Below are positions 13,824 to 27,090 of a DNA stretch of 64,000 bases, one piece after another. The notes beneath the pieces are model-generated. The model did not search any database. It was not told the DNA's origin and worked only from the letters and a program-made list of their open reading frames with translations. How positions within the stretch are numbered: the first letter of the stretch is position 1; each line of letters opens with the position of its first letter. The stretch lies in IMG/VR virus record IMGVR_UViG_3300009104_001210, positions 152,423 to 216,422 of that record; one strand, 5' to 3'. Position numbers and translations under genes: made by a program.

Positions 13824-13895
13824 GGCCCCATCGTCTAATGGTGAGGACGTCGCCCTTTCAAGGCGGAGATATGGGTTCGACTCCCGTTGGGGCTA
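13824..13895 (+). tRNA. tRNA-Glu(TTC)
   Basis: Acceptor GGCCCCA/TGGGGCT; anticodon loop CT-TTC-AA; T-loop TTCGACT. Confidence 0.92.
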
Positions 13896-13896
13896 C

Positions 13897-13979
13897 GGGC
13901 AGGTAGCAAAGCGGTTAAATGCACCAAACCGTAAGTTTGGCGTCGTGAGACTACGGTGGTTCGAATCCATCCCTGCCCT
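13897..13979 (+). tRNA. tRNA-Tyr(GTA), atypical (C33, U73)
   Basis: Acceptor GGGCAGG/CCTGCCC; CCAAA-CCGTAAG-TTTGG anticodon arm; long variable arm; TTCGAAT T-loop. Confidence 0.8.
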
Positions 13980-13980
13980 C

Positions 13981-14053
13981 GGGGCTGTAGCTCATTTGGG
14001 AGAGCGCTTCCCTTGCACGGAAGAGGCAGCAGGTTCGATTCCTGTCAGCTCCA
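13981..14053 (+). tRNA. tRNA-Ala(TGC)
   Basis: GGGGCTG/CAGCTCC with G3:U70; loop CT-TGC-AC. Confidence 0.93.
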
Positions 14054-14054
14054 C

Positions 14055-14648
14055 ATGAAAAATCTATCTAGATCTGAAATAAGAGAAATAAAGAATAACC
14101 AATCAGAGTTGTATATGGAAAATGATAACTTTAAAGTTATTATACCATATACACATGATGCAGTTAAGATATATGGTAAAGGTACTAGTTGGTGTGTTTC
14201 TTGGGCAAAAGACGAAGACTATCAGTTTTATAATAAAACAGGTAAAATTCTTTTAATACTTAAAAAGAATGTTCATATTAAAGATAATACTGAAATAGAT
14301 GATGTGTGTTATAAAGTATCTATGTGGATGCCATATCAAAAATATTTGCCACTATATAGAAATTTTGGAAAAGGTGGTATAGAAGATATAGCTAAAAGAT
14401 ATGAGTCCGATAAAGAGTTATATAAAAGCGTATTAAATGGTTATGTAAATTCGGTTGATGGTATTACTATTCATAAAATAACAGCAGATTTTGAATATTA
14501 TGATGCTGATGATGCGCATTGTTTTATGCCTGTAAAGTATATAGAAGGAGATAAAGTAGTTTGCATAGATAGAGATTGGGAATTAGATTGGGAAATATTT
14601 GATAGTATAAGATATAAGTATGAATATGAGTGGCAATTTGAAGGATAA
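14055..14648 (+). CDS. hypothetical jumbo-phage protein (YGxGTxWC motif)
   Basis: Real start ATG 14055, after tRNA-Ala; KIYGKGTSWCVS. Confidence 0.6.
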   Translation: MKNLSRSEIREIKNNQSELYMENDNFKVIIPYTHDAVKIYGKGTSWCVSWAKDEDYQFYNKTGKILLILKKNVHIKDNTEIDDVCYKVSMWMPYQKYLPLYRNFGKGGIEDIAKRYESDKELYKSVLNGYVNSVDGITIHKITADFEYYDADDAHCFMPVKYIEGDKVVCIDRDWELDWEIFDSIRYKYEYEWQFEG

Positions 14649-14652
14649 TAAT

Positions 14653-14726
14653 GTGCTGGTGCCGGAGTGGTCTAACGGGGTGGGTTGCAAACCCATTATT
14701 CACAGGTTCGAATCCTGTTCAGCACT
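14653..14726 (+). tRNA. tRNA-Cys(GCA)
   Basis: GTGCTGG/TCAGCAC acceptor; loop TT-GCA-AA; U73. Confidence 0.9.
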
Positions 14727-14741
14727 CATAACTAAGGAGAA

Positions 14742-14849
14742 ATACCAATGTAATATACAACACTAAATATAAGATTAGGGTTTAGCAGTACCAATATATA
14801 AACTGTCGGTGTTTAAAGTACACCACAAAATTTAGTGTACGGATGGTAT
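14742..14849 (+). ncRNA. unclassified structured intergenic element
   Basis: Nested helices ATACCA/TGGTAT, ACACTAAAT/ATTTAGTGT, GCAGT/ACTGT, GGTGT/ACACC. Confidence 0.4.
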
Positions 14850-14879
14850 CTAAAGAGGGACGGAGGCGGGAAAAAATTA

Positions 14880-14952
14880 GCCACTTTAGCTCAGTTGGTA
14901 GAGCAGCTCACTTGTAATGAGCAGGTCCTCAGTTCGAGTCTGAGAAGTGGCT
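14880..14952 (+). tRNA. tRNA-Thr(TGT)
   Basis: GCCACTT/AAGTGGC acceptor; loop CT-TGT-AA. Confidence 0.93.
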
Positions 14953-14962
14953 CAAAAATAAT

Positions 14963-15990: not shown

Positions 15991-17157
15991 ATGAATAAAG
16001 TTGTAGTCAAAATCGAAATGTCGGGAAACCGATATAACGCTTTTGATTCTGATGGTAATAAATACACATCAGAAATTGGTACTGGAACACGTAAAAGAGC
16101 ATTTGAACAAGGTATGGCTCTTGAACGTCGTGAAGGTAAAACTGGTAAAACCTATTGGTGGAAAGTTCCAATGAGTGAATTTGAAGTATCATCAGTTCCT
16201 GAGTTTGATGTTTCTTCGGTAGAAGTACCTGAAGAACATGGTGAGATGTTGAATTTCATTCATAGTTCATATAAACTGAAACCTAAAGGTTTGGTTATGA
16301 AGGAACTGAAGTGGAAATATTTAGTTCGTTCAGGTGTTAGAGGTAAGAACATTCTAATGACAGGTCCTGCCGGATGTGGTAAAACATTGGCAGCTAAGTC
16401 GTTAGTTAACGCACTTGATCGTCCTGATTTTTACTTTAATTTGGGTGCGACTCAAGACCCTCGTTCCTCTCTAATTGGTAATACTCACTTTGATAAGTCA
16501 AAGGGTACTTACTTTTCAGAATCACTTTTTGTGAAGGCGATTTCGACGCCTAACTCAGTTATTCTGTTAGATGAGTTAAGTAGGGCTCACCCTGACGCTT
16601 GGAATATTTTGATGACAGTTCTTGATGAAGGTCAGAGATATCTAAGGTTGGATGAGGCTGACGGGCAGGCGACGATTAAAGTTGCAAGTGGTGTTACTTT
16701 TGTAGCGACAGCGAACATTGGTAATGAATACACTTCTACAAGAGTTATGGATAAAGCCTTAATGGATAGATTCATTATTGTAGAAATGGATGTTCTAAAC
16801 TCTGATGAGGAATATGGATTGTTACAATATATGTTTCCTCATGTGGATCCTGAGTTATTGAAAGCAGTTGCTGAGATAGCTCACGCATCAAGGTCAGAAT
16901 CAAAATCAGAAGCAGGTAGGATTTCAAGTGGAATTTCGACAAGAACTTCAGTTGAAATGTCTGGTCTTCTGTATGATGGTTTTGGATTAGATGAAGCGTC
17001 TGAAGTTAGTATCTATCCTCAGTATTCTGAAGATGGTGGAATGGAATCTGAAAGAACTTACATTAGACAGTTAGTACAGAAGTTCGTTTCTGATGGTAGT
17101 TCTGAAGACCTCTTTAATGAAGACGAAATAGAATCTACAGAAGATTCTGATTCTTAA
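15991..17157 (+). CDS. MoxR/CbbQ-like AAA+ ATPase
   Basis: Walker A GPAGCGKT, Walker B LLDELSRA, FVATAN, DRF. Confidence 0.88.
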   Translation: MNKVVVKIEMSGNRYNAFDSDGNKYTSEIGTGTRKRAFEQGMALERREGKTGKTYWWKVPMSEFEVSSVPEFDVSSVEVPEEHGEMLNFIHSSYKLKPKGLVMKELKWKYLVRSGVRGKNILMTGPAGCGKTLAAKSLVNALDRPDFYFNLGATQDPRSSLIGNTHFDKSKGTYFSESLFVKAISTPNSVILLDELSRAHPDAWNILMTVLDEGQRYLRLDEADGQATIKVASGVTFVATANIGNEYTSTRVMDKALMDRFIIVEMDVLNSDEEYGLLQYMFPHVDPELLKAVAEIAHASRSESKSEAGRISSGISTRTSVEMSGLLYDGFGLDEASEVSIYPQYSEDGGMESERTYIRQLVQKFVSDGSSEDLFNEDEIESTEDSDS

Positions 17158-18540: not shown

Positions 18541-19038
18541 ATGGCTAAAAAAGTAGATGTTAAAGAATATCAATGTAAGTTAATTAAGGTTTTAGATGGA
18601 GATACTATAGATTGTTTTATTGATTTAGGTTTCAATCTGAAAACTAAAAAACGTATACGATATATGGGAATAGATACTTGGGAATCAAGAACAAGAGATT
18701 TAGAAGAAAAGGCAAAAGGTTTAAAAGCTAAAGCTCGTAATAAAGAATTATTAGAAGGTGGAGTTTTTAAACTTAAATCATTTGGTACAGGTAAGTTCGG
18801 TAGAGTGTTAGGTGAAGTGTTTGTGGATCCTGATATTGTAGGAGAACATATTCAAGAGTGCATAGTAAATGATGATAGTGATATTGATTTAGACCATGAT
18901 GGTTGGGTAAGTGTTAATGATATCTTAATCGAAGAAGGACACGCTTACGAATATCATGGTGGTAAGAAAAAAGATTTCAAAAAAGAAATCAAAGAAGAAA
19001 AAGCTAACGCTAAATTAGTTAAAGGTAATGAAGTATGA
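18541..19038 (+). CDS. staphylococcal-nuclease (thermonuclease)-like protein
   Basis: VLDGDT, RIRYMGIDTWES, KFGRVLG. Confidence 0.85.
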   Translation: MAKKVDVKEYQCKLIKVLDGDTIDCFIDLGFNLKTKKRIRYMGIDTWESRTRDLEEKAKGLKAKARNKELLEGGVFKLKSFGTGKFGRVLGEVFVDPDIVGEHIQECIVNDDSDIDLDHDGWVSVNDILIEEGHAYEYHGGKKKDFKKEIKEEKANAKLVKGNEV

Positions 19039-19280
19039 AAACATTAAAATATTTTTCAGCAACTTGGTGTGGTCCTTGTAAGGCGTTTAAACCTGTTATG
19101 AATGAAATTGCATCAGAAGGGCATTTAGTAGAATTTATTGATATAGATAGATCACAGGATGTAGCATCAAAATATGGAATTAGATCTGTACCTACTGTAA
19201 TAATAGAACAAGGTGGACAAGAAGTTGACAGATTTTCAGGTGCTTTGCCAAAACAATTAGTATTGGAGAAAATAACCTAA
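19035..19280 (+). CDS. trxA: thioredoxin
   Basis: WCGPC; IRSVPT. Confidence 0.92.
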   Translation: MKTLKYFSATWCGPCKAFKPVMNEIASEGHLVEFIDIDRSQDVASKYGIRSVPTVIIEQGGQEVDRFSGALPKQLVLEKIT

Positions 19281-19442
19281 ATGCCTAGAATTTTTGGTAA
19301 TGAAGAACCTTCGAAAACAGGTAAGAGTACAAGACAAGGAATGGGTAGAGGAACTAAGTGGGGAACTAAACCTGCTGGTAAAGGTAATAAGAAAGCATTA
19401 ACCCGTTATAAGAAAAAATATCGTGGCCAAGGAAAGAGATAA
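19281..19442 (+). CDS. small highly basic protein (53 aa)
   Basis: MPRIFGNEEPSKTGKSTRQGMGRG...KKKYRGQGKR; not in the ORF track. Confidence 0.55.
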   Translation: MPRIFGNEEPSKTGKSTRQGMGRGTKWGTKPAGKGNKKALTRYKKKYRGQGKR

Positions 19443-20151
19443 AGTCGCAAATAGTTTATGGATAGGTAAGAAATTATTACCACAAAATATAATATCTATA
19501 AAATCTTTTTTACAAAATGGATTTGATTATAACTTATATGTTTATGATGAAGTAAAAGATATTCCATCAGGAGTAAATGTTCTTGATGGTAATGATATAT
19601 TACCTGATTCTGCTATATGGTACTACGGCAAAGGATTTAATAAAGGATCACCTTCAGGTTTTTCAAATGAATTTAGATTTACTTTCCTATATGATATTGG
19701 TGGATTATGGACTGATACTGATATAGTTTTATTGAAAGAATTCAATTTAGAACAACCTTTAATTTTTATAAGTCAAGAAAATCCTGATCAAAGTATAATG
19801 GCAACTACTTCTTTAATATATTCAAAACATCCAAAATTAGAAATTTTTAAAGATGCTTTAAATGAAATAACTTTTAGAAATAAAGAAAGAATTAAACATG
19901 GAGAAACTGGTCCAGATTTACTTGATTATTTAGTAAAGAAATATCAATTAGAAGAATTTGTTTTAGGTTATAATGCGTTTTGTTCAATAGGTTGGCATGA
20001 AATAGATAAGTTAATTAATGGAACTAAACTTTCAGAAGAAGCTATAGGATTACATTTGTTTAATGCTAGATGGGAAGCTGATGGAATTGATATTGATAAT
20101 TATAGTACATCTAAATCTATTCTTACTGAATTGAAGAAAAAGTATTTATGA
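19423..20151 (+). CDS. GT32/capsular-synthesis-type glycosyltransferase
   Basis: FSNEFRF...GGLWTDTD (DxD); HGETGP. Confidence 0.75.
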   Translation: MAKERDKVANSLWIGKKLLPQNIISIKSFLQNGFDYNLYVYDEVKDIPSGVNVLDGNDILPDSAIWYYGKGFNKGSPSGFSNEFRFTFLYDIGGLWTDTDIVLLKEFNLEQPLIFISQENPDQSIMATTSLIYSKHPKLEIFKDALNEITFRNKERIKHGETGPDLLDYLVKKYQLEEFVLGYNAFCSIGWHEIDKLINGTKLSEEAIGLHLFNARWEADGIDIDNYSTSKSILTELKKKYL

Positions 20152-21101
20152 AATTAAGTAGAGAGAAAAGAAGAGAAGTAGCATTATATCAAAGTGTTTA
20201 TTTTTATGATAGGAATACAAGATTTAATACTGATATTCATCCAGATGATTTTTTTCATACAACTAAATTTAGATCTTATTTTGATGATGATAATAGAATT
20301 AACGGTATTGTTCCTATAAATAAAATAGAGCAATCTATTTTTTTTAAAGATAAATATTATTATCCTAAAACTTATATTAAAAATCCAAAGTTAGAAGGAA
20401 TTTGGTTTATTAAACCAACGGATGGGTCTTTGGGTAATGATATTGAAATAACTGATGATTTAAGTTCAGTAAAAAATAATAAAAAAGCTATTTATCAACA
20501 ATCAATTGATAATCCTTTATTACATAAAAATAAAAAAATAGATTTTAGAACTTTTTTATTATTACAAACATTTGAGGGAAAATTTAGAGCATATTTTTAT
20601 AAAGATTCTATGTTAAGATGGACAACACTTGATTATAAAAAAGATGATTTTACATTGGAACGCCAAATAACAAATTATCTTGCAAAAAGAGATGGTAAAT
20701 TTTTTGGTAATACTATGGTTAGGGCATATTCTAAACACACATATCATTATTATAAAGAGTTACATGAAACTATGAAAAATATTATTGTAGATATTTCAAA
20801 AAGTATTTTTGATAGAGTGAATAATAAAACACAAAGAAATATATTTCAATTGTTTGGTGTAGATTTTATTCCTGATGAAGATAAGAATGTTTGGTTATTA
20901 GAAATGAATGGTAATCCAGGTCCTTATTTACATTTAGATAGACCATTAACAAAACAATTAAAGAATTGGACTTTAGATATAGTTGAAGATATATTTGATT
21001 TAACAGTATATCCAATGTATTATGGAAGAAAAAAAAAGTTAGGTGAATTTGAATTAGTATTTGAAAAAGATTTACAATTTGAAAAATGGATAGAAGTATG
21101 A
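20148..21101 (+). CDS. tubulin-tyrosine-ligase (TTL/TTLL) family ATP-grasp ligase
   Basis: WFIKP..GSLG..I; QQSIDNPLL..KKIDFR; FQLFGVDF...WLLEMNGNP. Confidence 0.85.
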   Translation: MKLSREKRREVALYQSVYFYDRNTRFNTDIHPDDFFHTTKFRSYFDDDNRINGIVPINKIEQSIFFKDKYYYPKTYIKNPKLEGIWFIKPTDGSLGNDIEITDDLSSVKNNKKAIYQQSIDNPLLHKNKKIDFRTFLLLQTFEGKFRAYFYKDSMLRWTTLDYKKDDFTLERQITNYLAKRDGKFFGNTMVRAYSKHTYHYYKELHETMKNIIVDISKSIFDRVNNKTQRNIFQLFGVDFIPDEDKNVWLLEMNGNPGPYLHLDRPLTKQLKNWTLDIVEDIFDLTVYPMYYGRKKKLGEFELVFEKDLQFEKWIEV

Positions 21102-21103
21102 AT

Positions 21104-21565
21104 ATTAACAGAAAAAGAGATAGACATATAGTAGATTATTTAAATAATCATTTTTATTGTAAATTAGGTATATCAAAAGTTCATGGTATAGGAGTTTTTG
21201 CATTAAGAGATATACCTGCTGGTATTGATCCGTTTGTTTTACCTAAAAAAGATAGGTTGGTTACAGTATATAAAGCAAGTTTGAAAAATTTAGATGAGAA
21301 TATTAAAGAATGGTTAGCTGAAAAATTTATAAATGATGATAAAGTTCAAACAATTTTACTTACTGATACTTTACAAAAACAGTTTAAATACTATTTTAAT
21401 CATAATGAAAAACCAAATTTAGAGTGGAATACACCAAAACATCGCCATCCATGTATGCCACCTTGTCCAAAATGTGGCGGACAAAATTTTATTACATTAC
21501 AAGATATAAAAAAAGATGAAGAAATTTTTGTTAATTATGCTATTGACACTAATATTTATAATTGA
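21104..21565 (+). CDS. SET-domain lysine methyltransferase
   Basis: HGIGVFALRDIPAG, YFNH, DIKKDEEIFVNY; start uncertain (track gives 21086). Confidence 0.85.
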   Translation: MNRKRDRHIVDYLNNHFYCKLGISKVHGIGVFALRDIPAGIDPFVLPKKDRLVTVYKASLKNLDENIKEWLAEKFINDDKVQTILLTDTLQKQFKYYFNHNEKPNLEWNTPKHRHPCMPPCPKCGGQNFITLQDIKKDEEIFVNYAIDTNIYN

Positions 21566-21597: not shown

Positions 21598-22932
21598 ATG
21601 ACATGGATTAATACTAAAACGGTATTCACTTGGAATACTAAGGACAAAAAGTACGAAGAAACTCTTAATGAGGGTTATGATTATACTGGTCCTACTGCTG
21701 AATGTTTTGGTTGTTTTATAGCAGGAACAGCTGTACCTACCTCAGATGTAACATATGAGTTGATAGAAAATTTAAAAGTTGGTGATACAGTACTTACAGT
21801 TAATACAAATACAAAACCATTCACATTAGAAGAAAATAAAATACTTGAAATAGCTACACCTGTTCATGAGAATATGGTTGAGATAAAATTTGATGCTAAA
21901 ATGTTCAAAGATGGTATGCCAACATATAAGTATAGTTTAGATGAAGCAAAACCATCTCCCTCTAAGATAGCAGTTGGTCCGAAGAAATTTCCAGAGTTCT
22001 GGCTTGAAGTTTCAGAACTAGATAAACTTTCTGATGATGAGAAAGAAGCAGAGTTTAATAAATATATTGACGCCACTTGGAAGGATTTAGTAAATACAAA
22101 TACATTTGATCACCCATATTTGGTAAAAAATAAAGGTTGGTGTTCATATAAACCAAGTTTAACTAAAGAAACATATAGTATGGATGTTGGTCAGCTTGAA
22201 GTTGGTGATATTTGTTATGTGCTCAATCCTGTAAGGGGAAGAAGTCCTTTTACTGAGGTAAAGATTGTTAGTATTGAAGAAAAAAATGAAGAAACCCAAA
22301 CATATAACTTAGCTAGTGTTGAAAATAATCATAATTATTTAGCTAATGGTGTATTAGTTCACAATAAAGAAAGTTTGGGTGGTGAAGATGTAACTATTTT
22401 AAGTAGTTCTGTTGACCACGCTGATGGAGAAGTACATGCTTCTATGTCAATTGATGATAAAGTTTTAGCAGCTAGTATTTCAGGTTTACCTGATACAGAT
22501 GTAGCATCAGAATTTTTATTGTGGGAATATACGGGCAGTGATATTGCTTCTCAAATTACATTAGTTACTGCTTCAGTTGATTATATTATGTCTTCTTCTC
22601 GTAACAATTGGTTAAATATTGATTGTAAAAATGGTAGATCTGATACTTTTAGAATTACACCTGGACACCCATTATTAGTTAAGAGTGAAAGTTATGGTGA
22701 GGGATATGGGCTTCCTGGTTCTACAGGATCAGCAGCACTTACAGGATCTGTTTGGTATTTTGATTATGCAGGAGACATTAATACAAATTATAAACTTTTA
22801 AGTTCTTCATTGGAAGAGGTAGACATTGAATCAATTACACCATATAGTGCGTCTGAATCGTCTAGCTTTTTTAGATTTGATATAGAACCACAGGATACAT
22901 ATTTCGTAGATCACATATTAATACATAATTAG
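21598..22932 (+). CDS. tandem Hint-domain (intein-like) autoprocessing protein
   Basis: 38-aa leader; Hint 1 CFIAGT...TFDHP...VLVHN; KE linker; Hint 2 SLGGED...TPGHP...ILIHN-stop. Confidence 0.85.
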   Translation: MTWINTKTVFTWNTKDKKYEETLNEGYDYTGPTAECFGCFIAGTAVPTSDVTYELIENLKVGDTVLTVNTNTKPFTLEENKILEIATPVHENMVEIKFDAKMFKDGMPTYKYSLDEAKPSPSKIAVGPKKFPEFWLEVSELDKLSDDEKEAEFNKYIDATWKDLVNTNTFDHPYLVKNKGWCSYKPSLTKETYSMDVGQLEVGDICYVLNPVRGRSPFTEVKIVSIEEKNEETQTYNLASVENNHNYLANGVLVHNKESLGGEDVTILSSSVDHADGEVHASMSIDDKVLAASISGLPDTDVASEFLLWEYTGSDIASQITLVTASVDYIMSSSRNNWLNIDCKNGRSDTFRITPGHPLLVKSESYGEGYGLPGSTGSAALTGSVWYFDYAGDINTNYKLLSSSLEEVDIESITPYSASESSSFFRFDIEPQDTYFVDHILIHN

Positions 22933-22939
22933 AGGTTAC

Positions 22940-23854
22940 ATGATATTAACTACTTCTTATACAAGTCCACCTGGATTTGGTCATAGAATTTTTGTTTGGG
23001 AATATCTTTATTTAATTAATCAATATAATGATTTCAAATTTGATTTAGTTTTATCCGATAGTGTTTATGAGGAAACTAAATATTTAGATTTTCCAAAAAC
23101 AAAAATAGTGTCGGATGATAGATATACTACTAAGAAATTTAGAGCGAAAAAAATCGTAGCTGAGATATTAGATAAACAATTAACTTCACACGACCATATG
23201 CTCAAAGATTGGGATTGTTGTTATTACCATAACGAAAATATTTTTATACCTGATATAGATACTCTTAGACCAATTCAAGAAATTCAAATGAAAGACAAAA
23301 AACTATTACAGAAAATAAAAGATACTGTTAAAGATTGTATTGGAATTCATGTGAGACGGGGAGATTTAAAAGATGATGGTAGTGAGAATTATAAAAAATG
23401 GTTAAATAGAGATAATAACAATTGGAGATATGCATACTTAGAAGATAATTATTATCTTACAAGATTAGAAAATCATCCAAATAAAAAATTCTATTTAAGT
23501 TCAGATGCTACATTAGAAGAATTAAAATTTATTACAGATAACTATGATGTTATTATGAGTGATGATATTTTAGGAGAAAAAAAAGAAAGAATTAAATGGG
23601 GATTTAATGACAACTATTATATGCATGGTGGTCCTAAAATAGATTTACATTCAATAGTAGATTTGATGGCACTAACATATTCTAAAAAATTTATTGCAAG
23701 TAATTCTATGTGGAGTGAATTTATTTCAAATTATAAACAAGATAGTTGGAATAATACAGATACTATTTATCCAACAAGATGTTATAAAGTTGCACCAAGA
23801 GAAGGATTATATTATTTGGATTACGGATTTCCGTCATCTATGTTACACTCATGA
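22940..23854 (+). CDS. GT11/fucosyltransferase-like glycosyltransferase
   Basis: GFGHR, IGIHVRRGD, FYLSSD, DLMAL...FIASNS. Confidence 0.7.
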   Translation: MILTTSYTSPPGFGHRIFVWEYLYLINQYNDFKFDLVLSDSVYEETKYLDFPKTKIVSDDRYTTKKFRAKKIVAEILDKQLTSHDHMLKDWDCCYYHNENIFIPDIDTLRPIQEIQMKDKKLLQKIKDTVKDCIGIHVRRGDLKDDGSENYKKWLNRDNNNWRYAYLEDNYYLTRLENHPNKKFYLSSDATLEELKFITDNYDVIMSDDILGEKKERIKWGFNDNYYMHGGPKIDLHSIVDLMALTYSKKFIASNSMWSEFISNYKQDSWNNTDTIYPTRCYKVAPREGLYYLDYGFPSSMLHS

Positions 23855-24579
23855 GTTTATATAAACATCCAATAAAATTCGATCTAGATAAATTATTAAA
23901 AGAAAAAGACTATGCTGAATCAGTAGTTACATATGATTCAGGATTTAGAAATCATTGTATATCTTTGTTAGGTAGAAAAGAAGAAGAAATGGAAGGTTGG
24001 AATCTTTATTTAGCAGAAATGAATAGGCATAGAATATGGAAAGATTATAATAGACAAGTGAATGTATTATATGATACAGAAATCTTACAAGATATTCCTT
24101 TTGATAGAAAACATTTACCTTATATGAATAGTGTATTTGATATATTTAATGAAGGAACTGAAGTTTTAGTTGCTAGATTAATTCGAAGAGAATCACATTC
24201 TTCATACGGCATACATAGAGATTATGGAAAAGGTATGGAAGAACTTGAAGATTCTAAGAAGATGATGTGGAGATTTCAGATTCCACTTATATCAAATAAA
24301 GACTGCTACTTAATTATTTTTAAAGATCATGTAGTTGACAAATGGAAAGAGTTATATGGTGAATATCAATTAGAAGATTTTTTAGATAAACCATCTGATG
24401 ATTTTCAGGTTCATCATTTAGAGGATGGTTATTTATATCACTTTAAAGTTTGGAAGTATGCACACACGGTATGGAATATGGGGGAAACAGATAGATATAC
24501 ATTAGTAGTTGATACAATACCAAATGAGTGGATAGAAAATTGGGCAAAGGAAAATTTAAATGAAGTTTTACCTTCATAA
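23851..24579 (+). CDS. 2OG-Fe(II) oxygenase (Asp/Asn beta-hydroxylase-like)
   Basis: HRD (HxD), RFQIPL, HTVWN, DRYTLVVD. Confidence 0.7.
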   Translation: MSLYKHPIKFDLDKLLKEKDYAESVVTYDSGFRNHCISLLGRKEEEMEGWNLYLAEMNRHRIWKDYNRQVNVLYDTEILQDIPFDRKHLPYMNSVFDIFNEGTEVLVARLIRRESHSSYGIHRDYGKGMEELEDSKKMMWRFQIPLISNKDCYLIIFKDHVVDKWKELYGEYQLEDFLDKPSDDFQVHHLEDGYLYHFKVWKYAHTVWNMGETDRYTLVVDTIPNEWIENWAKENLNEVLPS

Positions 24580-25528
24580 AGATATTTTATATGAAGATCA
24601 AGCGTGGAAAACTGTTAAGTTTTTATTAGATGTAAAAAAAATATCTAATGAGGTTGTAGATATGCACAATATAGAATCTATAAAGCAATTAAATGTTTCA
24701 AGTGATGATATATGTTTTGCTAGATTTGGTCATCATTTTGATGATAAGATAGCAACTAATAAAGCATATGATGTATTAACTCAAAAATTTAATAAAATAT
24801 ATCCTTCAAAAGACGCATATTATTATTATGATGATAAATTAAAGCAATATGAATTTATGTTAGAAAATGATATACCTTGTTTGAAAACATATTATGTAGG
24901 TAGTAAAGAAGAGATAGAAAAATTAAATATAAAATTTCCTATAGTTACTAAAAAAACTTGGGGGGCTGGAACTGAACAAGTTAATAAGTGGGATGATTAT
25001 GAATCTATTGTTGATAATAAAGATACTCGAAGTTGGACAGGGGGATCTATATTTCCATGTTTAGTTCAAGAATATAAAGATGTAGATTATGATATTAGAG
25101 TTAGAATTTTAAACTCTAAAGTTTTCTTTACTAAAAGAATGCACGAATTTAAAACAAAAAATAAAGATAATTTTCCATATGGTACAAAAGAGATTCTTAA
25201 AAAAGATAGAATAAAATATCATTTACCACCATATGAAGTTCCTGTAGCATTACCAATAAATGATTTAGCAGAAGTAGAAGATATTATACCTATAGTAGAA
25301 AAATTACATAAGATTCAAAATGAAAAATTGAATAGTAATTTTGTGGTGTGGGATATTCTTAGAACAAATGAAGGAATAAAAATTCTTGAATTTAGTCATG
25401 TTACAGTATATAAAAGTTTTCCACAAATTTATTATGATATAGAATATAAAGAAGCAAATAAATTAACAATAAAAAATCGTGAACATTTTTTTTATTTGTA
25501 TAACGAAATATTAAAAGGATTAATATGA
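24560..25528 (+). CDS. RimK-like ATP-grasp ligase
   Basis: DKLKQYEFM, PIVTKKTWGAG, LVQEY...YDIRV, VWDIL...ILEFS. Confidence 0.75.
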   Translation: MKFYLHKDILYEDQAWKTVKFLLDVKKISNEVVDMHNIESIKQLNVSSDDICFARFGHHFDDKIATNKAYDVLTQKFNKIYPSKDAYYYYDDKLKQYEFMLENDIPCLKTYYVGSKEEIEKLNIKFPIVTKKTWGAGTEQVNKWDDYESIVDNKDTRSWTGGSIFPCLVQEYKDVDYDIRVRILNSKVFFTKRMHEFKTKNKDNFPYGTKEILKKDRIKYHLPPYEVPVALPINDLAEVEDIIPIVEKLHKIQNEKLNSNFVVWDILRTNEGIKILEFSHVTVYKSFPQIYYDIEYKEANKLTIKNREHFFYLYNEILKGLI

Positions 25529-27090
25529 AGAAAGTTATTATAGTTGGTGGTGGATTTGCAGGTTACTTAACAGCGTTGTTTTTAAATAAAAAATTTCCTA
25601 AATTAAAAATTGATATAATAAAATCATCAGATAAAGAACAAATTTCTGCTGGAGAACAAACAGGCAAAGAACAACTACAATTGTTTTTTGAATCATTAGG
25701 AATTGAAGAAACTGAATGGTTTAGTAGAACAAAATCTTTTTTAAAAATAGGTAATTCTTTTGTTGGGTGGGGAAACCGTGAAAATTTTGATCCTCGAGTT
25801 GGTGGACCAGATGTAGTTAATCATAGTTTTGTAATGGAAAATAAATTATTACCTTTACTTAGGAATGGTGGTGGTATGAAATCCGTAAAGGATTCTATGA
25901 AATATAATGATAAGTTACATACTGAATTATATCAAAATAGTTTTTTAGAAACACCCATAGATAATACGGATGATTATATAGATAGTTTTAAAAAACACTT
26001 TAAAAATAGTTTTTTTAATAGAAAGAATAATAGAGCCATAGCTCATATGCATGATTGGTTAGAGATAGGTAAATTTATAGAAACTAAGTTTGATGATAAT
26101 GTTAAAATAATTACTGATCATATAACTGATGTGGTTGTAGATAAAAAAAATAATACTATAGAATATCTTGTTAATAAAGATAAAGAAAAGATTAAAGCAG
26201 ATCACTACGTAGATTGTACAGGTATTAGTAGAATTTTGATTTCTAAACTTAGTAAAGTTGTAGATATTAGTGATGAATATCCTGTAAATAGTGCCGTATT
26301 TGGTCCAGTAGAATATATAGATAGAACTAAAGAGATGGTGCCAACCTTATATACTACTGCTTTTAAAAATGGTTATTCATTTAAAACACCATTACAACAT
26401 AGGATAGGAACAGGATATGTCTATTCAGATAAGTATATTAGTAAAGATGAAGCAATAGATGAGATAAATGATTATTGGGATGGTAGATTTAAGTCAGATC
26501 AAGTTAATCATTTAAAATGGACTCCATCTTATGTAGTTAAACCTTTTCAGAAAAATTGTAGCGCTGTAGGATTAGCAGGACAATTTGATTGTCCAATGGA
26601 ATCTACAGTATTTACTCAGATATCAACTGCTCTTCAACAATTAGGAAATTATTTAAATAGAGATAATAAATTATTATACATGAATCGTTCTGATATAAGA
26701 GATGAAGATATGTTAAATTATTGTAATACTTGGACTGAATATACTTTTCATAATACAAGACATTTTAAACAAATGATGTTTTATACTACAAATAGAGATG
26801 ATAGCGAATTTTGGAAGAATATTAAAACACTTAATTATTCTGATATTTTTTATAAAAAATTAAGTTTCTTTTTAGACAATTCATTTGATTATATAATAGA
26901 AAATAGAAATAAGTTTCCTGATTATACTCCACCAACAAATTTTAATATTAATGAAGATAGATTTTGGAGAGTATATCAAAAAGGATTTAAAGGATATTTT
27001 GATTATATGGGAATAAGGGGTGTAGGACATAGTATGATATTAGATGTTCATAATTGGTTAATGATTCTTGCGTATAAAAAATACATTTAA
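25525..27090 (+). CDS. tryptophan-halogenase (PrnA)-like flavoprotein
   Basis: IVGGGFAG, KIGNSFVGW, YVDCTG, PLQHRIGTGYVYS, PMEST. Confidence 0.8.
   Translation: MKKVIIVGGGFAGYLTALFLNKKFPKLKIDIIKSSDKEQISAGEQTGKEQLQLFFESLGIEETEWFSRTKSFLKIGNSFVGWGNRENFDPRVGGPDVVNHSFVMENKLLPLLRNGGGMKSVKDSMKYNDKLHTELYQNSFLETPIDNTDDYIDSFKKHFKNSFFNRKNNRAIAHMHDWLEIGKFIETKFDDNVKIITDHITDVVVDKKNNTIEYLVNKDKEKIKADHYVDCTGISRILISKLSKVVDISDEYPVNSAVFGPVEYIDRTKEMVPTLYTTAFKNGYSFKTPLQHRIGTGYVYSDKYISKDEAIDEINDYWDGRFKSDQVNHLKWTPSYVVKPFQKNCSAVGLAGQFDCPMESTVFTQISTALQQLGNYLNRDNKLLYMNRSDIRDEDMLNYCNTWTEYTFHNTRHFKQMMFYTTNRDDSEFWKNIKTLNYSDIFYKKLSFFLDNSFDYIIENRNKFPDYTPPTNFNINEDRFWRVYQKGFKGYFDYMGIRGVGHSMILDVHNWLMILAYKKYI

What the first reader, a model, noticed from the sequence alone, without database searches (positions are those of the whole stretch)
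20148..21565. Eukaryote-type TTL ligase and SET methyltransferase as an adjacent pair in a phage
All three TTL/TTLL signature blocks and the SET motifs are intact. These families write tubulin glutamylation/tyrosination and lysine methylation in eukaryotes. A coupled pair in a bacteriophage suggests a phage protein-modification code on host or virion proteins.
Basis: partly seen in the sequence, partly recalled or inferred. Interest (0 to 1): 0.7.

Follow-up and report, generated by a model that had tools for sequence, protein, structure and literature searches.

The report
Phage tubulin-ligase-like gene with Hint partner
A marine T4-like phage really does carry intact eukaryote-type TTL ligase and SET methyltransferase genes side by side, but the ligase came from giant viruses and its constant partner across related phages is a self-cleaving Hint-domain protein, with SET only an optional extra.

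Summary
Observation confirmed. Window 20148-21101 encodes a 317-aa TTL-family ATP-grasp ligase (Pfam TTL 92.5 bits against YheC/D 33.5). All catalytic residues are present, and the confident model matches only TTL/TTLL structures. Window 21086-21565 encodes a 159-aa SET protein with intact motifs. The genome is a complete 216-kb T4-like marine phage without tubulin or PhuZ.

Interpretation partly supported. No TTL relative was found in 50,697 catalogued phages or in one genome each of 185,579 prokaryote species. The phage proteins form one clade nested among TTLs from giant-virus-like contigs (support 99/97 and 99/93), which points to a giant virus to phage transfer.

In 44 related loci with downstream sequence, 42 have a Hint-family gene after TTL (9 of 9 lineages). 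SET lies between them in only 4 of 9 lineages. Other neighbours vary: GT32-like glycosyltransferase, 2OG oxygenase, sulfotransferase, radical-SAM enzymes. The phage also has a second, unrelated SET 22 kb away.

The Hint protein is a highly conserved ~36-aa leader plus an autoprocessing Hint domain (Ser1, TxxH, terminal HN). The residue before the cleavage site is always Asp or Glu. My inferred model is that self-cleavage exposes an acidic C-terminus that the TTL-like ligase extends, and that SET and the others are optional tailoring enzymes. This is untested.

The parts
20148..21101 (+). TTL-family ATP-grasp amino-acid ligase, 317 aa. It is a minimal core with no microtubule-binding extension.
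   Evidence: Pfam TTL 92.5 bits. Catalytic K89, K130/D132/R134, D239, E252/N254 are conserved. AF2 pLDDT 88.3, pTM 0.90. Foldseek top hits are TTLL6/TTL/TTLL11 in PDB and giant-virus TTLs in BFVD.
21086..21565 (+). Small SET-domain methyltransferase, 159 aa. It overlaps the TTL 3' end by 16 nt. It has no post-SET zinc cluster. A lineage-specific Cys-rich insert lies at residues ~118-129.
   Evidence: Pfam SET 40.5 bits. GxG, NH and EE..Y motifs are conserved. Profile hits to MLL/SETD2 SET domains. All fold hits are SET domains, including vSET, but TM is only ~0.4.
21598..22932 (+). Hint-family autoprocessing protein, 444 aa, the constant downstream partner of TTL. It consists of a leader, an inserted Hint-1 module, a Lys-Glu linker and a Hint-2 module.
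   Evidence: Pfam Hint_2/Hint/Intein_splicing/AXH hits. Homologs follow TTL in 42 of 44 loci.
21598..21711 (+). Conserved N-terminal leader, residues 1-38 (starts MTWINTK, ends AECFG). It is the candidate modified peptide.
   Evidence: In the base forms 20 of the first 31 residues are invariant across 21 loci, and Cys36 is nearly invariant.
21712..22365 (+). Hint-1, residues 39-256: an intein-like module (Cys1 ... VLVHN) inserted after the leader. Its +1 residue is Lys, so it is not a canonical splicing intein. It carries an in-frame strain polymorphism at 21928-22082.
   Evidence: Pfam Hint_2 starts at residue 39. The same insertion site is used in L055 and L067, and the base forms lack the module. 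A 153-nt to 27-nt replacement is seen in contigs from other studies.
22372..22929 (+). Hint-2, residues 259-444: a Hint domain that ends at the protein's C-terminal His-Asn. Ser259 is at the nucleophile position and is preceded by Glu258.
   Evidence: hhalign of the base-form family against the Hint-1 modules gives probability 96.8%, E 2.1e-10, end to end. Ser aligns with Cys1, TxxH with block B, HN with HN. The -1 residue is Asp or Glu in all sequences.
19423..20151 (+). GT32-like (DXD) glycosyltransferase, 242 aa. It overlaps the TTL start by 4 nt and is the frequent upstream neighbour.
   Evidence: Pfam Gly_transf_sug 22.7 bits, just under the cut-off. Orthologs at 42-61% identity lie upstream of TTL in most loci.
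19035..19280 (+). Thioredoxin, part of the conserved backbone upstream of the island (SNase, Trx, small ORF, GT).
   Evidence: The same order is seen in L016, L025 and many metagenome loci.
22940..27090 (+). Downstream run of further tailoring-type genes: weak GT11-like (22940-23854), weak Asp/Arg-hydroxylase-like (23851-24579), weak RimK-like ATP-grasp (24560-25528), tryptophan halogenase (25525-27090).
   Evidence: Pfam hits are weak and sub-threshold. PHROG 2928 tryptophan halogenase scores 244 bits. No + strand terminator-like site was found between 18400 and 27400.

Best explanation
The TTL-like gene encodes an active ATP-dependent amino-acid ligase that a lineage of marine T4-like phages acquired from giant viruses of eukaryotes. 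Its functional partner is the gene that always follows it: a small protein made of a highly conserved ~36-residue leader, a Gly-rich linker and a Hint autoprocessing domain.

Shown: family membership of all three proteins, intact catalytic residues, the giant-virus affinity of TTL, the near-universal TTL-Hint adjacency, and the invariant acidic residue before the Hint nucleophile.

Inferred: the Hint domain cleaves at its N-terminal junction through a Ser ester and releases the leader peptide with a C-terminal Asp or Glu. The TTL-like ligase activates that carboxylate, or a Glu side chain in the leader, as an acyl phosphate and adds one or more amino acids, as TTL does on the C-terminal Glu of alpha-tubulin. 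SET (Lys methylation) would then be one of several interchangeable tailoring enzymes acting on the same substrate, alongside the GT32-like glycosyltransferase, 2OG oxygenase, sulfotransferase or radical-SAM enzymes found in sister lineages. The amino acid added and the biological role of the product are unknown.
For: TTL identity and integrity.

Origin: only 4 clusters at E<=1e-30 among 1.84 billion representatives. None in 50,697 phage records and none in the GTDB species genomes by family peptide patterns. In the careful tree the phage clade has support 100/95, is sister to P0017/P0022 (99/97), and sits inside a clade of giant-virus-context proteins (99/93).

TTL-Hint linkage: 42 of 44 loci and 9 of 9 lineages. 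It persists while both flanks change: Trx-GT-TTL, GT-oxygenase-TTL, sulfotransferase-TTL, radical SAM-357 aa-TTL. In IMG/VR the leader-bearing Hint gene was found only in TTL-bearing records.

Hint chemistry: hhalign 96.8% with Ser1, TxxH and terminal HN in register. The -1 residue is always Asp or Glu. The Hint protein is more conserved (64-89% identity) than TTL (46-77%) in the same loci.

SET is facultative.
Against: There is no direct evidence of cleavage, ligation or methylation. The complex prediction for TTL with the base-form Hint protein gave no answer (score 0.00). Two lineages lack the leader (Met-Gly directly before Hint-1 in L016/L079 and L043) and one has a different short leader (L011/L035), so the leader cannot be the universal substrate, although the acidic -1 residue at Hint-2 is kept. 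All loci come from related phages that share a backbone, so adjacency partly reflects common descent. The island also holds sugar-pathway genes, which fits a glycan role. No RNA run was listed as holding the genes. Strain-level dN/dS is uninformative.
Confidence: 0.4

Rival explanations
1. One reading: TTL and SET are an obligate functional pair that together write a combined modification (amino-acid ligation plus lysine methylation) on host or virion proteins unrelated to the neighbouring genes.
For: The ORFs overlap by 16 nt. TTL-SET adjacency is kept at 31-39% TTL identity in four lineages. Those are the earliest-branching lineages, so the pair may be ancestral. A different ATP-grasp enzyme is followed by three tandem small SET genes in L021/L022.
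Against: Five of nine TTL lineages lack SET. A second, unrelated SET lies 22 kb from TTL in the same phage. SET relatives also occur in bacterial contigs without any ATP-grasp neighbour. There is no tubulin or PhuZ in the genome.
Confidence: 0.2
2. TTL acts on a host or other phage protein with an acidic tail (for example a host cytoskeletal or ribosomal protein, or the phage MoxR/CobS-like AAA+ protein). Its neighbours are simply co-resident cargo of a hypervariable island.
For: TTL-family enzymes modify acidic tails (established knowledge). The most acidic C-terminal tail in the phage proteome belongs to the AAA+ protein at 15991-17157, 3 kb upstream, and that tail is conserved in composition in L025. 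The giant-virus sister TTLs presumably act on host proteins (PMC11915834).
Against: It does not explain why the Hint gene stays fixed about 30 nt downstream of TTL while everything else around it is exchanged.
Confidence: 0.2
3. The ligase amidates a carboxylate on a sugar or other small molecule, as part of a glycan or metabolite tailoring pathway together with the glycosyltransferase and sugar enzymes.
For: A GT32-like glycosyltransferase is the commonest upstream neighbour. NDP-hexose 2,3-dehydratase, a sugar C-methyltransferase and a DegT-type aminotransferase follow the module in L025 and L072. There is a weak hit to the sugar-transfer-associated ATP-grasp family, 19 bits.
Against: All characterised TTL-family members ligate amino acids to proteins (established knowledge). 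The TTL score far exceeds any other ATP-grasp family. Several lineages have TTL-Hint without a GT nearby.
Confidence: 0.12
4. The genes are decaying or neutral relics of horizontal transfer and have no function in the phage.
For: Strain-level substitutions are mostly nonsynonymous (TTL 4 synonymous, 11 nonsynonymous; SET 0 synonymous, 8 nonsynonymous), but the numbers are too small to test.
Against: The frames are intact, and 40-50 invariant positions, including every catalytic residue, are kept across lineages only 31-47% identical. The genes occur in many marine samples collected over ten years.
Confidence: 0.03

Closest known systems
Giant-virus (Nucleocytoviricota) TTL homologs, e.g. those of Cafeteria roenbergensis virus, Hokovirus and Marseillevirus LCMAC
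   Same: They are short (~300 aa) stand-alone TTL cores. They are the best structural matches in the viral library (E 1e-15 to 1e-18, TM 0.58-0.68). Proteins from giant-virus-like contigs are the sister group in the tree. TTL forms deep viral clades in giant viruses (PMC11915834).
   Different: Their hosts have tubulin, and this phage's bacterial host and the phage itself do not. The neighbours also differ: a 122-aa protein and a Ser/Thr kinase in the giant-virus loci, against GT, SET and Hint in the phage.
Eukaryotic tubulin tyrosine ligase (TTL) and TTLL glutamylases/glycylases
   Same: The same ATP-grasp core and catalytic residues. Sequence matches to solved TTL reach E 1e-11. Fold matches go to TTLL6, TTL, TTLL11, TTLL3 and TTLL8.
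   Different: The phage protein has no microtubule-binding domain and ends right after the core. It cannot be assigned to a tyrosine, glutamate or glycine subfamily. Its substrate cannot be tubulin.
Small viral and prokaryotic SET proteins (chlorovirus vSET, bacterial and archaeal SET proteins)
   Same: A minimal SET domain without a post-SET zinc cluster. vSET is among the top fold hits.
   Different: About 16-20% identity only. The window lineage has a Cys-rich insert. The substrate is unknown, and there are no histones in the system.
Hedgehog-type Hog proteins and bacterial intein-like (BIL) / pretoxin-Hint domains
   Same: A Hint domain with a position-1 nucleophile, TxxH and terminal HN, placed C-terminal to a cargo segment that it would release by N-terminal cleavage. 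Atlas look-alikes are PT-HINT, intein and Vint families from tailed phages.
   Different: The cargo is only about 40 residues and highly conserved. Ser replaces Cys at position 1 of Hint-2. There is no C-extein, so no splicing. Linkage to a TTL-type ligase was not found in the literature searched.
RiPP-like peptide tailoring systems with ATP-grasp ligases (graspetides) and RimK-type tail extension of ribosomal protein S6
   Same: An ATP-grasp enzyme lies next to a small conserved peptide-bearing gene and a changing set of tailoring enzymes. RimK adds Glu to a C-terminal Glu (established knowledge).
   Different: The ligase belongs to the TTL family, not the RimK/MdnC family. The proposed peptide release is by a fused Hint domain rather than a separate protease. 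All of this is inferred.

Membership tests
TTL/TTLL family (Pfam PF03133) | The sequence matches the family model above its curated threshold and better than other ATP-grasp families | tested here: met
   92.5 bits against a cut-off of 20.1. The next family, YheC/D, scores 33.5. The whole-genome search gives 91.6 bits at one locus.
TTL/TTLL family (Pfam PF03133) | ATP-grasp catalytic set: ATP-binding lysines, the Arg of the K-x-D-x-R block, and the Mg-binding Asp/Glu/Asn | tested here: met
   K89, K130, D132, R134, D239, E252 and N254 align to the corresponding residues of solved TTL. They are invariant or nearly invariant in 73 relatives.
TTL/TTLL family (Pfam PF03133) | Three-domain TTL fold | tested here: met
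   AF2 pLDDT 88.3, pTM 0.90. The top 50 PDB hits listed are all TTLL6, TTL or TTLL11, at E 1e-13 to 1e-15 and TM about 0.6.
TTL/TTLL family (Pfam PF03133) | Tubulin or microtubule recognition elements (the cationic microtubule-binding domain of TTLLs) and a tubulin substrate | tested here: not met
   The protein ends at residue 317, directly after the core, and the alignments to TTLL6 cover only its core. No tubulin-family gene is in the phage genome.
TTL/TTLL family (Pfam PF03133) | ATP-dependent ligation of Tyr, Glu or Gly to a protein carboxylate | not testable with these tools
   The subfamily is not resolved: glycylases and glutamylases score alike.
SET-domain methyltransferases (Pfam PF00856) | Match above the curated threshold, with the GxG, NH and ELxxxY (catalytic Tyr) motifs | tested here: met
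   40.5 bits against a cut-off of 22.4. G34, G36, N105, H106, E145, E146 and Y151 are conserved across relatives.
SET-domain methyltransferases (Pfam PF00856) | SET beta-fold with pseudoknot | tested here: inconclusive
   The model has pLDDT 79.5 from a shallow alignment. All fold hits are SET domains with probability 1.0, but TM is only about 0.4.
SET-domain methyltransferases (Pfam PF00856) | Post-SET zinc cluster (present in many eukaryotic histone methyltransferases) | tested here: not met
   The protein ends 8 residues after Tyr151, as in minimal viral and prokaryotic SET proteins.
Hint / intein superfamily (for the gene at 21598-22932) | Nucleophile at position 1, block-B TxxH, C-terminal His-Asn | tested here: met
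   Hint-1 runs from Cys39 to His255-Asn256 (Pfam Hint_2). Hint-2 has Ser259, Thr354..His357 and His443-Asn444, shown in register by hhalign at 96.8% probability.
Canonical splicing inteins | Cys, Ser or Thr at the +1 position of the C-extein | tested here: not met
   The +1 residue after Hint-1 is Lys, Leu or Val in all six lineages. Hint-2 has no C-extein at all.
Tailed phage of the T4-like kind (context of the claim 'in a phage') | gp23-type major capsid and T4-type baseplate genes | tested here: met
   Gp23 PF07068 scores 257 bits and a baseplate wedge PHROG scores 69 bits. The capsid is 52-57% identical to those of Flavobacterium phage immuto and Microcystis phage Mel-JY01, and 28% identical to classical T4-likes.

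The most novel reading that the evidence does not exclude
A previously undescribed kind of phage-encoded peptide or protein maturation module. A Hint domain cleaves itself off a conserved ~40-residue peptide and exposes an acidic C-terminus. A TTL ligase captured from giant viruses then extends or branches that end with amino acids. Lineage-specific enzymes (SET, oxygenase, sulfotransferase, glycosyltransferase, radical SAM) decorate it further. This would be tubulin-tail chemistry reused in a bacterial virus to make a modified peptide or protein of unknown role.
Probability: 0.25. Interest if true: 0.85.

Novelty: new variant of a known kind. Interest (0 to 1): 0.62.

Why it matters
TTL-family enzymes are regarded as eukaryotic tubulin-tail writers, with giant-virus copies assumed to act on host microtubules. 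This is a monophyletic TTL clade living in tailed phages of bacteria, where no tubulin exists, so the enzyme must have a different substrate. The gene neighbourhood nominates a specific, easily testable one.

It also appears to be a gene transfer between two unrelated virus realms, giant viruses and tailed phages, that share the same seawater.

If the proposed Hint-plus-TTL mechanism holds, it would add a new route to C-terminally modified peptides or proteins, and a compact ligase with possible use in protein-tagging chemistry. If it does not hold, the result still corrects the reading of the locus, because SET is an accessory rather than the partner.

Tried and rejected
- **Complex prediction.** TTL with the base-form Hint protein, using my own alignments A5 and A6, gave no answer (score 0.00). 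It counts neither for nor against binding.
- **Tubulin/PhuZ in the genome.** None found.
- **psbA as a cyanophage marker.** None found.
- **Strain-level dN/dS, window against L003.** Too few substitutions to interpret.
- **RNA evidence.** No RNA run was listed as holding the pair.
- **Block transfer from giant viruses.** The GT and RimK-like genes beside a giant-virus TTL (L027) show no BLASTP similarity to the phage's copies, so only TTL is shared.
- **Inherited backbone as an explanation for GT-TTL-Hint.** The nearest catalogued phage with the GT (LR756508) has it in another context. No catalogued phage has the Hint-family protein.
- **IMG/VR records for the giant-virus sister TTLs, to test for an NCLDV capsid.** The attempts failed. 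The 'giant-virus context' label therefore rests on neighbouring genes, very low GC, BFVD fold hits and the literature.
- **Acidic-tail parallel in giant-virus loci.** The conserved 122-aa neighbour has no acidic tail.
- **Subfamily and amino-acid specificity of TTL.** Not resolvable from sequence or fold.
- **Iyer et al. 2009 on amidoligases.** The paper is not held in the library.
- **Promoter scan.** No more sites than chance.
Full report
**1. The observation**

- The first ORF matches Pfam TTL at 92.5 bits (E 3.6e-26, cut-off 20.1). The next ATP-grasp family, YheC/D, reaches only 33.5 bits.
- The second ORF matches SET at 40.5 bits (cut-off 22.4).
- Against solved TTL, and across 73 relatives, the catalytic set is in place: K89 in the W-x-x-K-P block, K130/D132/R134 in the K-x-D-x-R block, and D239 and E252/N254 in the F-G-x-D ... 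L-L-E-x-N block.
- An AlphaFold2 model is confident (pLDDT 88.3, pTM 0.90). Its 50 best PDB matches are all TTLL6, TTL or TTLL11.
- SET keeps G34-x-G36, N105-H106 and E145-E146...Y151. It matches MLL/SETD2-type SET domains by profile. By fold it matches only SET domains, including chlorovirus vSET, though with modest TM because the alignment behind the model is shallow.

**2. The genome**

- The window is the last 64 kb of a 216,422-bp virus record (31% GC, 246 of 259 ORFs on one strand) that CheckV rates complete.
- It has a T4-type gp23 capsid gene (257 bits) and a gp6-like baseplate wedge.
- The capsid is 52-57% identical to those of Flavobacterium phage immuto, Microcystis phage Mel-JY01 and an uncultured 484-kb phage. 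It is only 28% identical to classical T4-likes.
- There is no psbA and no tubulin-family gene. The host is unknown.
- The locus is real. At least 20 marine or seawater runs from 12 studies hold it. Contigs from other studies span GT-TTL-SET-Hint start with about 1.3% substitutions.

**3. Where the TTL comes from**

- tblastn found no relative in 50,697 catalogued phage genomes.
- Family-specific peptide patterns found none in one genome each of 185,579 prokaryote species.
- IMG/VR holds only one other record, at 34% identity.
- An exhaustive HMMER search of 1.84 billion representatives gave 3,130 hits, but only four clusters at E <= 1e-30. Beyond these lie proteins of ~300 aa from metagenomes and long eukaryotic TTLLs such as Paramecium and Diplonema 'tubulin glycylase 3'.
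- In a bootstrapped tree the phage proteins are one clade (100/95). Their sister is P0017/P0022 (99/97). Both nest in a clade (99/93) whose other members I traced, for five of seven, to very AT-rich contigs (21-24% GC, one at 34%). Those contigs carry eukaryote-type topoisomerase II, ubiquitin, ankyrin, RING fingers, Ser/Thr kinases, RNR and a dual-specificity phosphatase.
- In the viral structure library the ten best matches are all giant-virus TTLs (CroV, Hokovirus, Marseillevirus LCMAC, ChoanoV1). Phage ATP-grasp proteins start at rank 13 with TM below 0.4.
- TTL is a known giant-virus gene with deep viral clades (PMC11915834).
- The simplest reading is one transfer from a giant virus into this phage lineage. 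I could not fetch named giant-virus records to test this formally.

**4. Is TTL-SET a coupled pair?**

A metagenome scan with the phage-family alignment gave about 50 further loci. I tabulated their neighbours with HMMs built from the window and its relatives.

- Of 44 loci with sequence downstream of TTL, 42 have a Hint-family gene next: 36 directly (about 30 nt away) and 6 with SET in between. Two have the glycosyltransferase next.
- After clustering TTLs at 70% identity there are nine lineages. The Hint gene follows TTL in 9 of 9, and SET is present in 4 of 9.
- The SET-bearing lineages (window, L016, L011) are the three earliest branches of the phage clade. SET may therefore have been there from the start and been lost once, in the lineage that instead carries a 2OG-Fe(II) oxygenase upstream.
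- The same phage also has a second, unrelated SET gene 22 kb away, next to a class-V aminotransferase.
- SET relatives elsewhere sit in a bacterial contig without any ATP-grasp neighbour. In one case they form three tandem copies behind a GARS-type ATP-grasp gene.
- SET is thus a real but facultative neighbour.

**5. The constant partner**

The proteins called 'unknown' after TTL in L004 and L025 turned out to be 45-48% identical to the window's Hint protein.

- The base form (~220 aa) has a leader (consensus MKWINTKVEFTWDSKKQKYVETDVQGYHYSGPIAQC), a Gly-rich linker and a C-terminal domain ending in VLVHN.
- Twenty of the first 31 residues are invariant in 21 loci. The protein is more conserved (64-89% identity) than TTL in the same loci (46-77%).
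- Pfam does not recognise the C-terminal domain. A profile-profile comparison with the Pfam-recognised Hint-1 modules gives 96.8% probability (E 2e-10), end to end. An invariant Ser sits at the Cys1 nucleophile position, TxxH sits at block B, and the terminal His-Asn is in register.
- The residue before that Ser is Asp or Glu in every sequence.
- The window's 444-aa version has an additional intein-like Hint-1 (Cys39 to Asn256) inserted just after the leader, at the same site as in L055 and L067. The residue after it is Lys, so it is not a canonical intein.
- Hint-1 carries an in-frame strain polymorphism.
- Two lineages lack the leader and one has a different short one.
- In IMG/VR the leader-bearing gene occurs only in TTL-bearing records.
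- No catalogued phage has it.

**6. The changing periphery**

Around the fixed TTL-Hint core the neighbours change between lineages:

- Trx-GT-TTL-SET-Hint in the window, L016 and L011.
- Trx-GT-oxygenase-TTL-Hint, followed by a sugar C-methyltransferase and an NDP-hexose dehydratase, in L025.
- A sulfotransferase directly before TTL in L043.
- Radical SAM, a 357-aa protein, TTL and Hint, followed by three more radical-SAM enzymes including a SPASM type and a B12-binding type, in L072.
- In the window the run continues with weak GT11-like, hydroxylase-like and RimK-like genes and a tryptophan halogenase.
- No terminator-like site was found on the + strand between 18400 and 27400.

**7. Mechanism**

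Shown: family membership, intact catalytic residues, the giant-virus affinity, the TTL-Hint linkage, and the acidic -1 residue.

Inferred: the Hint domain undergoes an N-O acyl shift at its Ser and releases the upstream segment with a C-terminal Asp or Glu. The TTL-like ligase then does what the family does, which is to activate a carboxylate in a flexible acidic tail and add an amino acid. SET and the other enzymes would be alternative decorations.

I put this at about 0.4 for the general statement (the Hint protein is the substrate or partner and SET is an accessory). I put the full cleavage-then-extension scheme at about 0.25.

The points against are the leaderless variants, the uninformative complex prediction, the absence of expression data, and the shared ancestry of all the loci.

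The rivals are:

- An obligate TTL-SET pair acting on other proteins.
- A host or phage acidic-tail substrate. The AAA+ protein at 15991-17157 has the most acidic tail in the proteome.
- A sugar or small-molecule amidation role.
- Neutral relics of transfer.

**8. Novelty**

I found no report of TTL-family genes in bacteriophages in the searched literature. A broad survey of jumbo phages mentions R2K ATP-grasp ligases shared with giant viruses but not TTL or SET.

The parts all belong to known families. The new elements are their occurrence in a tailed phage, the apparent origin in giant viruses, and the fixed TTL-Hint pairing. I rate this a new variant of a known kind, with interest 0.62.

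Noticed in passing
genome 149956-150255 (about 2.2 kb before the window start; locus L088:1429-1875): A second SET-domain gene (148 aa, SET 40.5 bits) in the same phage. It has no significant pairwise similarity to the TTL-adjacent SET and lies next to a class-V (NifS-like) aminotransferase.
   Followed up: partly
window 21928-22082: An in-frame strain polymorphism inside the inserted Hint-1 module. Contigs from other studies replace 153 nt with 27 nt, a net loss of 42 codons. The L003/L030 variants encode the 402-aa form.
   Followed up: partly
window 22096-22227 (Hint protein residues 167-210): The Pfam AXH model (the ataxin-1/HBP1 module) matches the block-B region of Hint-1 at 58.5 bits, above its cut-off of 33. 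Atlas clusters of phage proteins also carry AXH together with PT-HINT. No paper holding both 'AXH' and 'Hint domain' was found.
   Followed up: partly
window 15991-17157: The MoxR/CobS-like AAA+ protein has the most acidic C-terminal tail of the whole phage proteome (ends EDEIESTEDSDS). The tail's composition is conserved in the 78%-identical L025 ortholog. It is a possible alternative TTL substrate.
   Followed up: partly
window 13824-14953: A cluster of five tRNA genes: Glu-TTC, Tyr-GTA, Ala-TGC, Cys-GCA and Thr-TGT.
   Followed up: no
window 22940-27090: A run of further tailoring-type genes after the Hint gene: weak GT11-like, weak Asp/Arg-hydroxylase-like cupin, weak RimK-like ATP-grasp, and a clear tryptophan halogenase (PHROG 2928, 244 bits).
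   Followed up: partly
window 21437-21475 (SET residues ~118-129): A lineage-specific insert rich in His, Cys and Pro (HRHPCMPPCPKCGG) between the NH motif and the catalytic Tyr. It is absent from the other SET relatives and has low confidence in the model. It may bind a metal.
   Followed up: no
L021:2260-6296 and L022: Three tandem small SET genes (175, 137 and 151 aa) lie directly after a 474-aa GARS_A/GARS_C ATP-grasp gene and before an M29 aminopeptidase. This is another ATP-grasp plus SET association, with a different ligase family.
   Followed up: no
L072:2289-10745: In a sister phage lineage the TTL-Hint core lies among four radical-SAM genes (one with a SPASM domain, one B12-binding) and a DegT-type aminotransferase fragment.
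   Followed up: partly
L043:2715-3482 (the same gap exists in L055 and L067): A sulfotransferase (Sulfotransfer_3, 40 bits) lies directly upstream of TTL, after two tandem 2OG-Fe(II) oxygenase genes.
   Followed up: partly
L013:2753-5337 and L017:1936-4455: In the giant-virus-like sister loci TTL has its own conserved neighbours: a 122-aa protein upstream (45% identical between the two loci) and a ~393-aa Ser/Thr kinase downstream. L027 holds two TTL paralogs side by side.
   Followed up: partly
genome 2007-2975 and 4029-5144 (outside the window): Two further Hint-domain paralogs in the same phage (22-25% identical to the TTL-linked one), near the genome start. They have no leader and no TTL nearby.
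   Followed up: no
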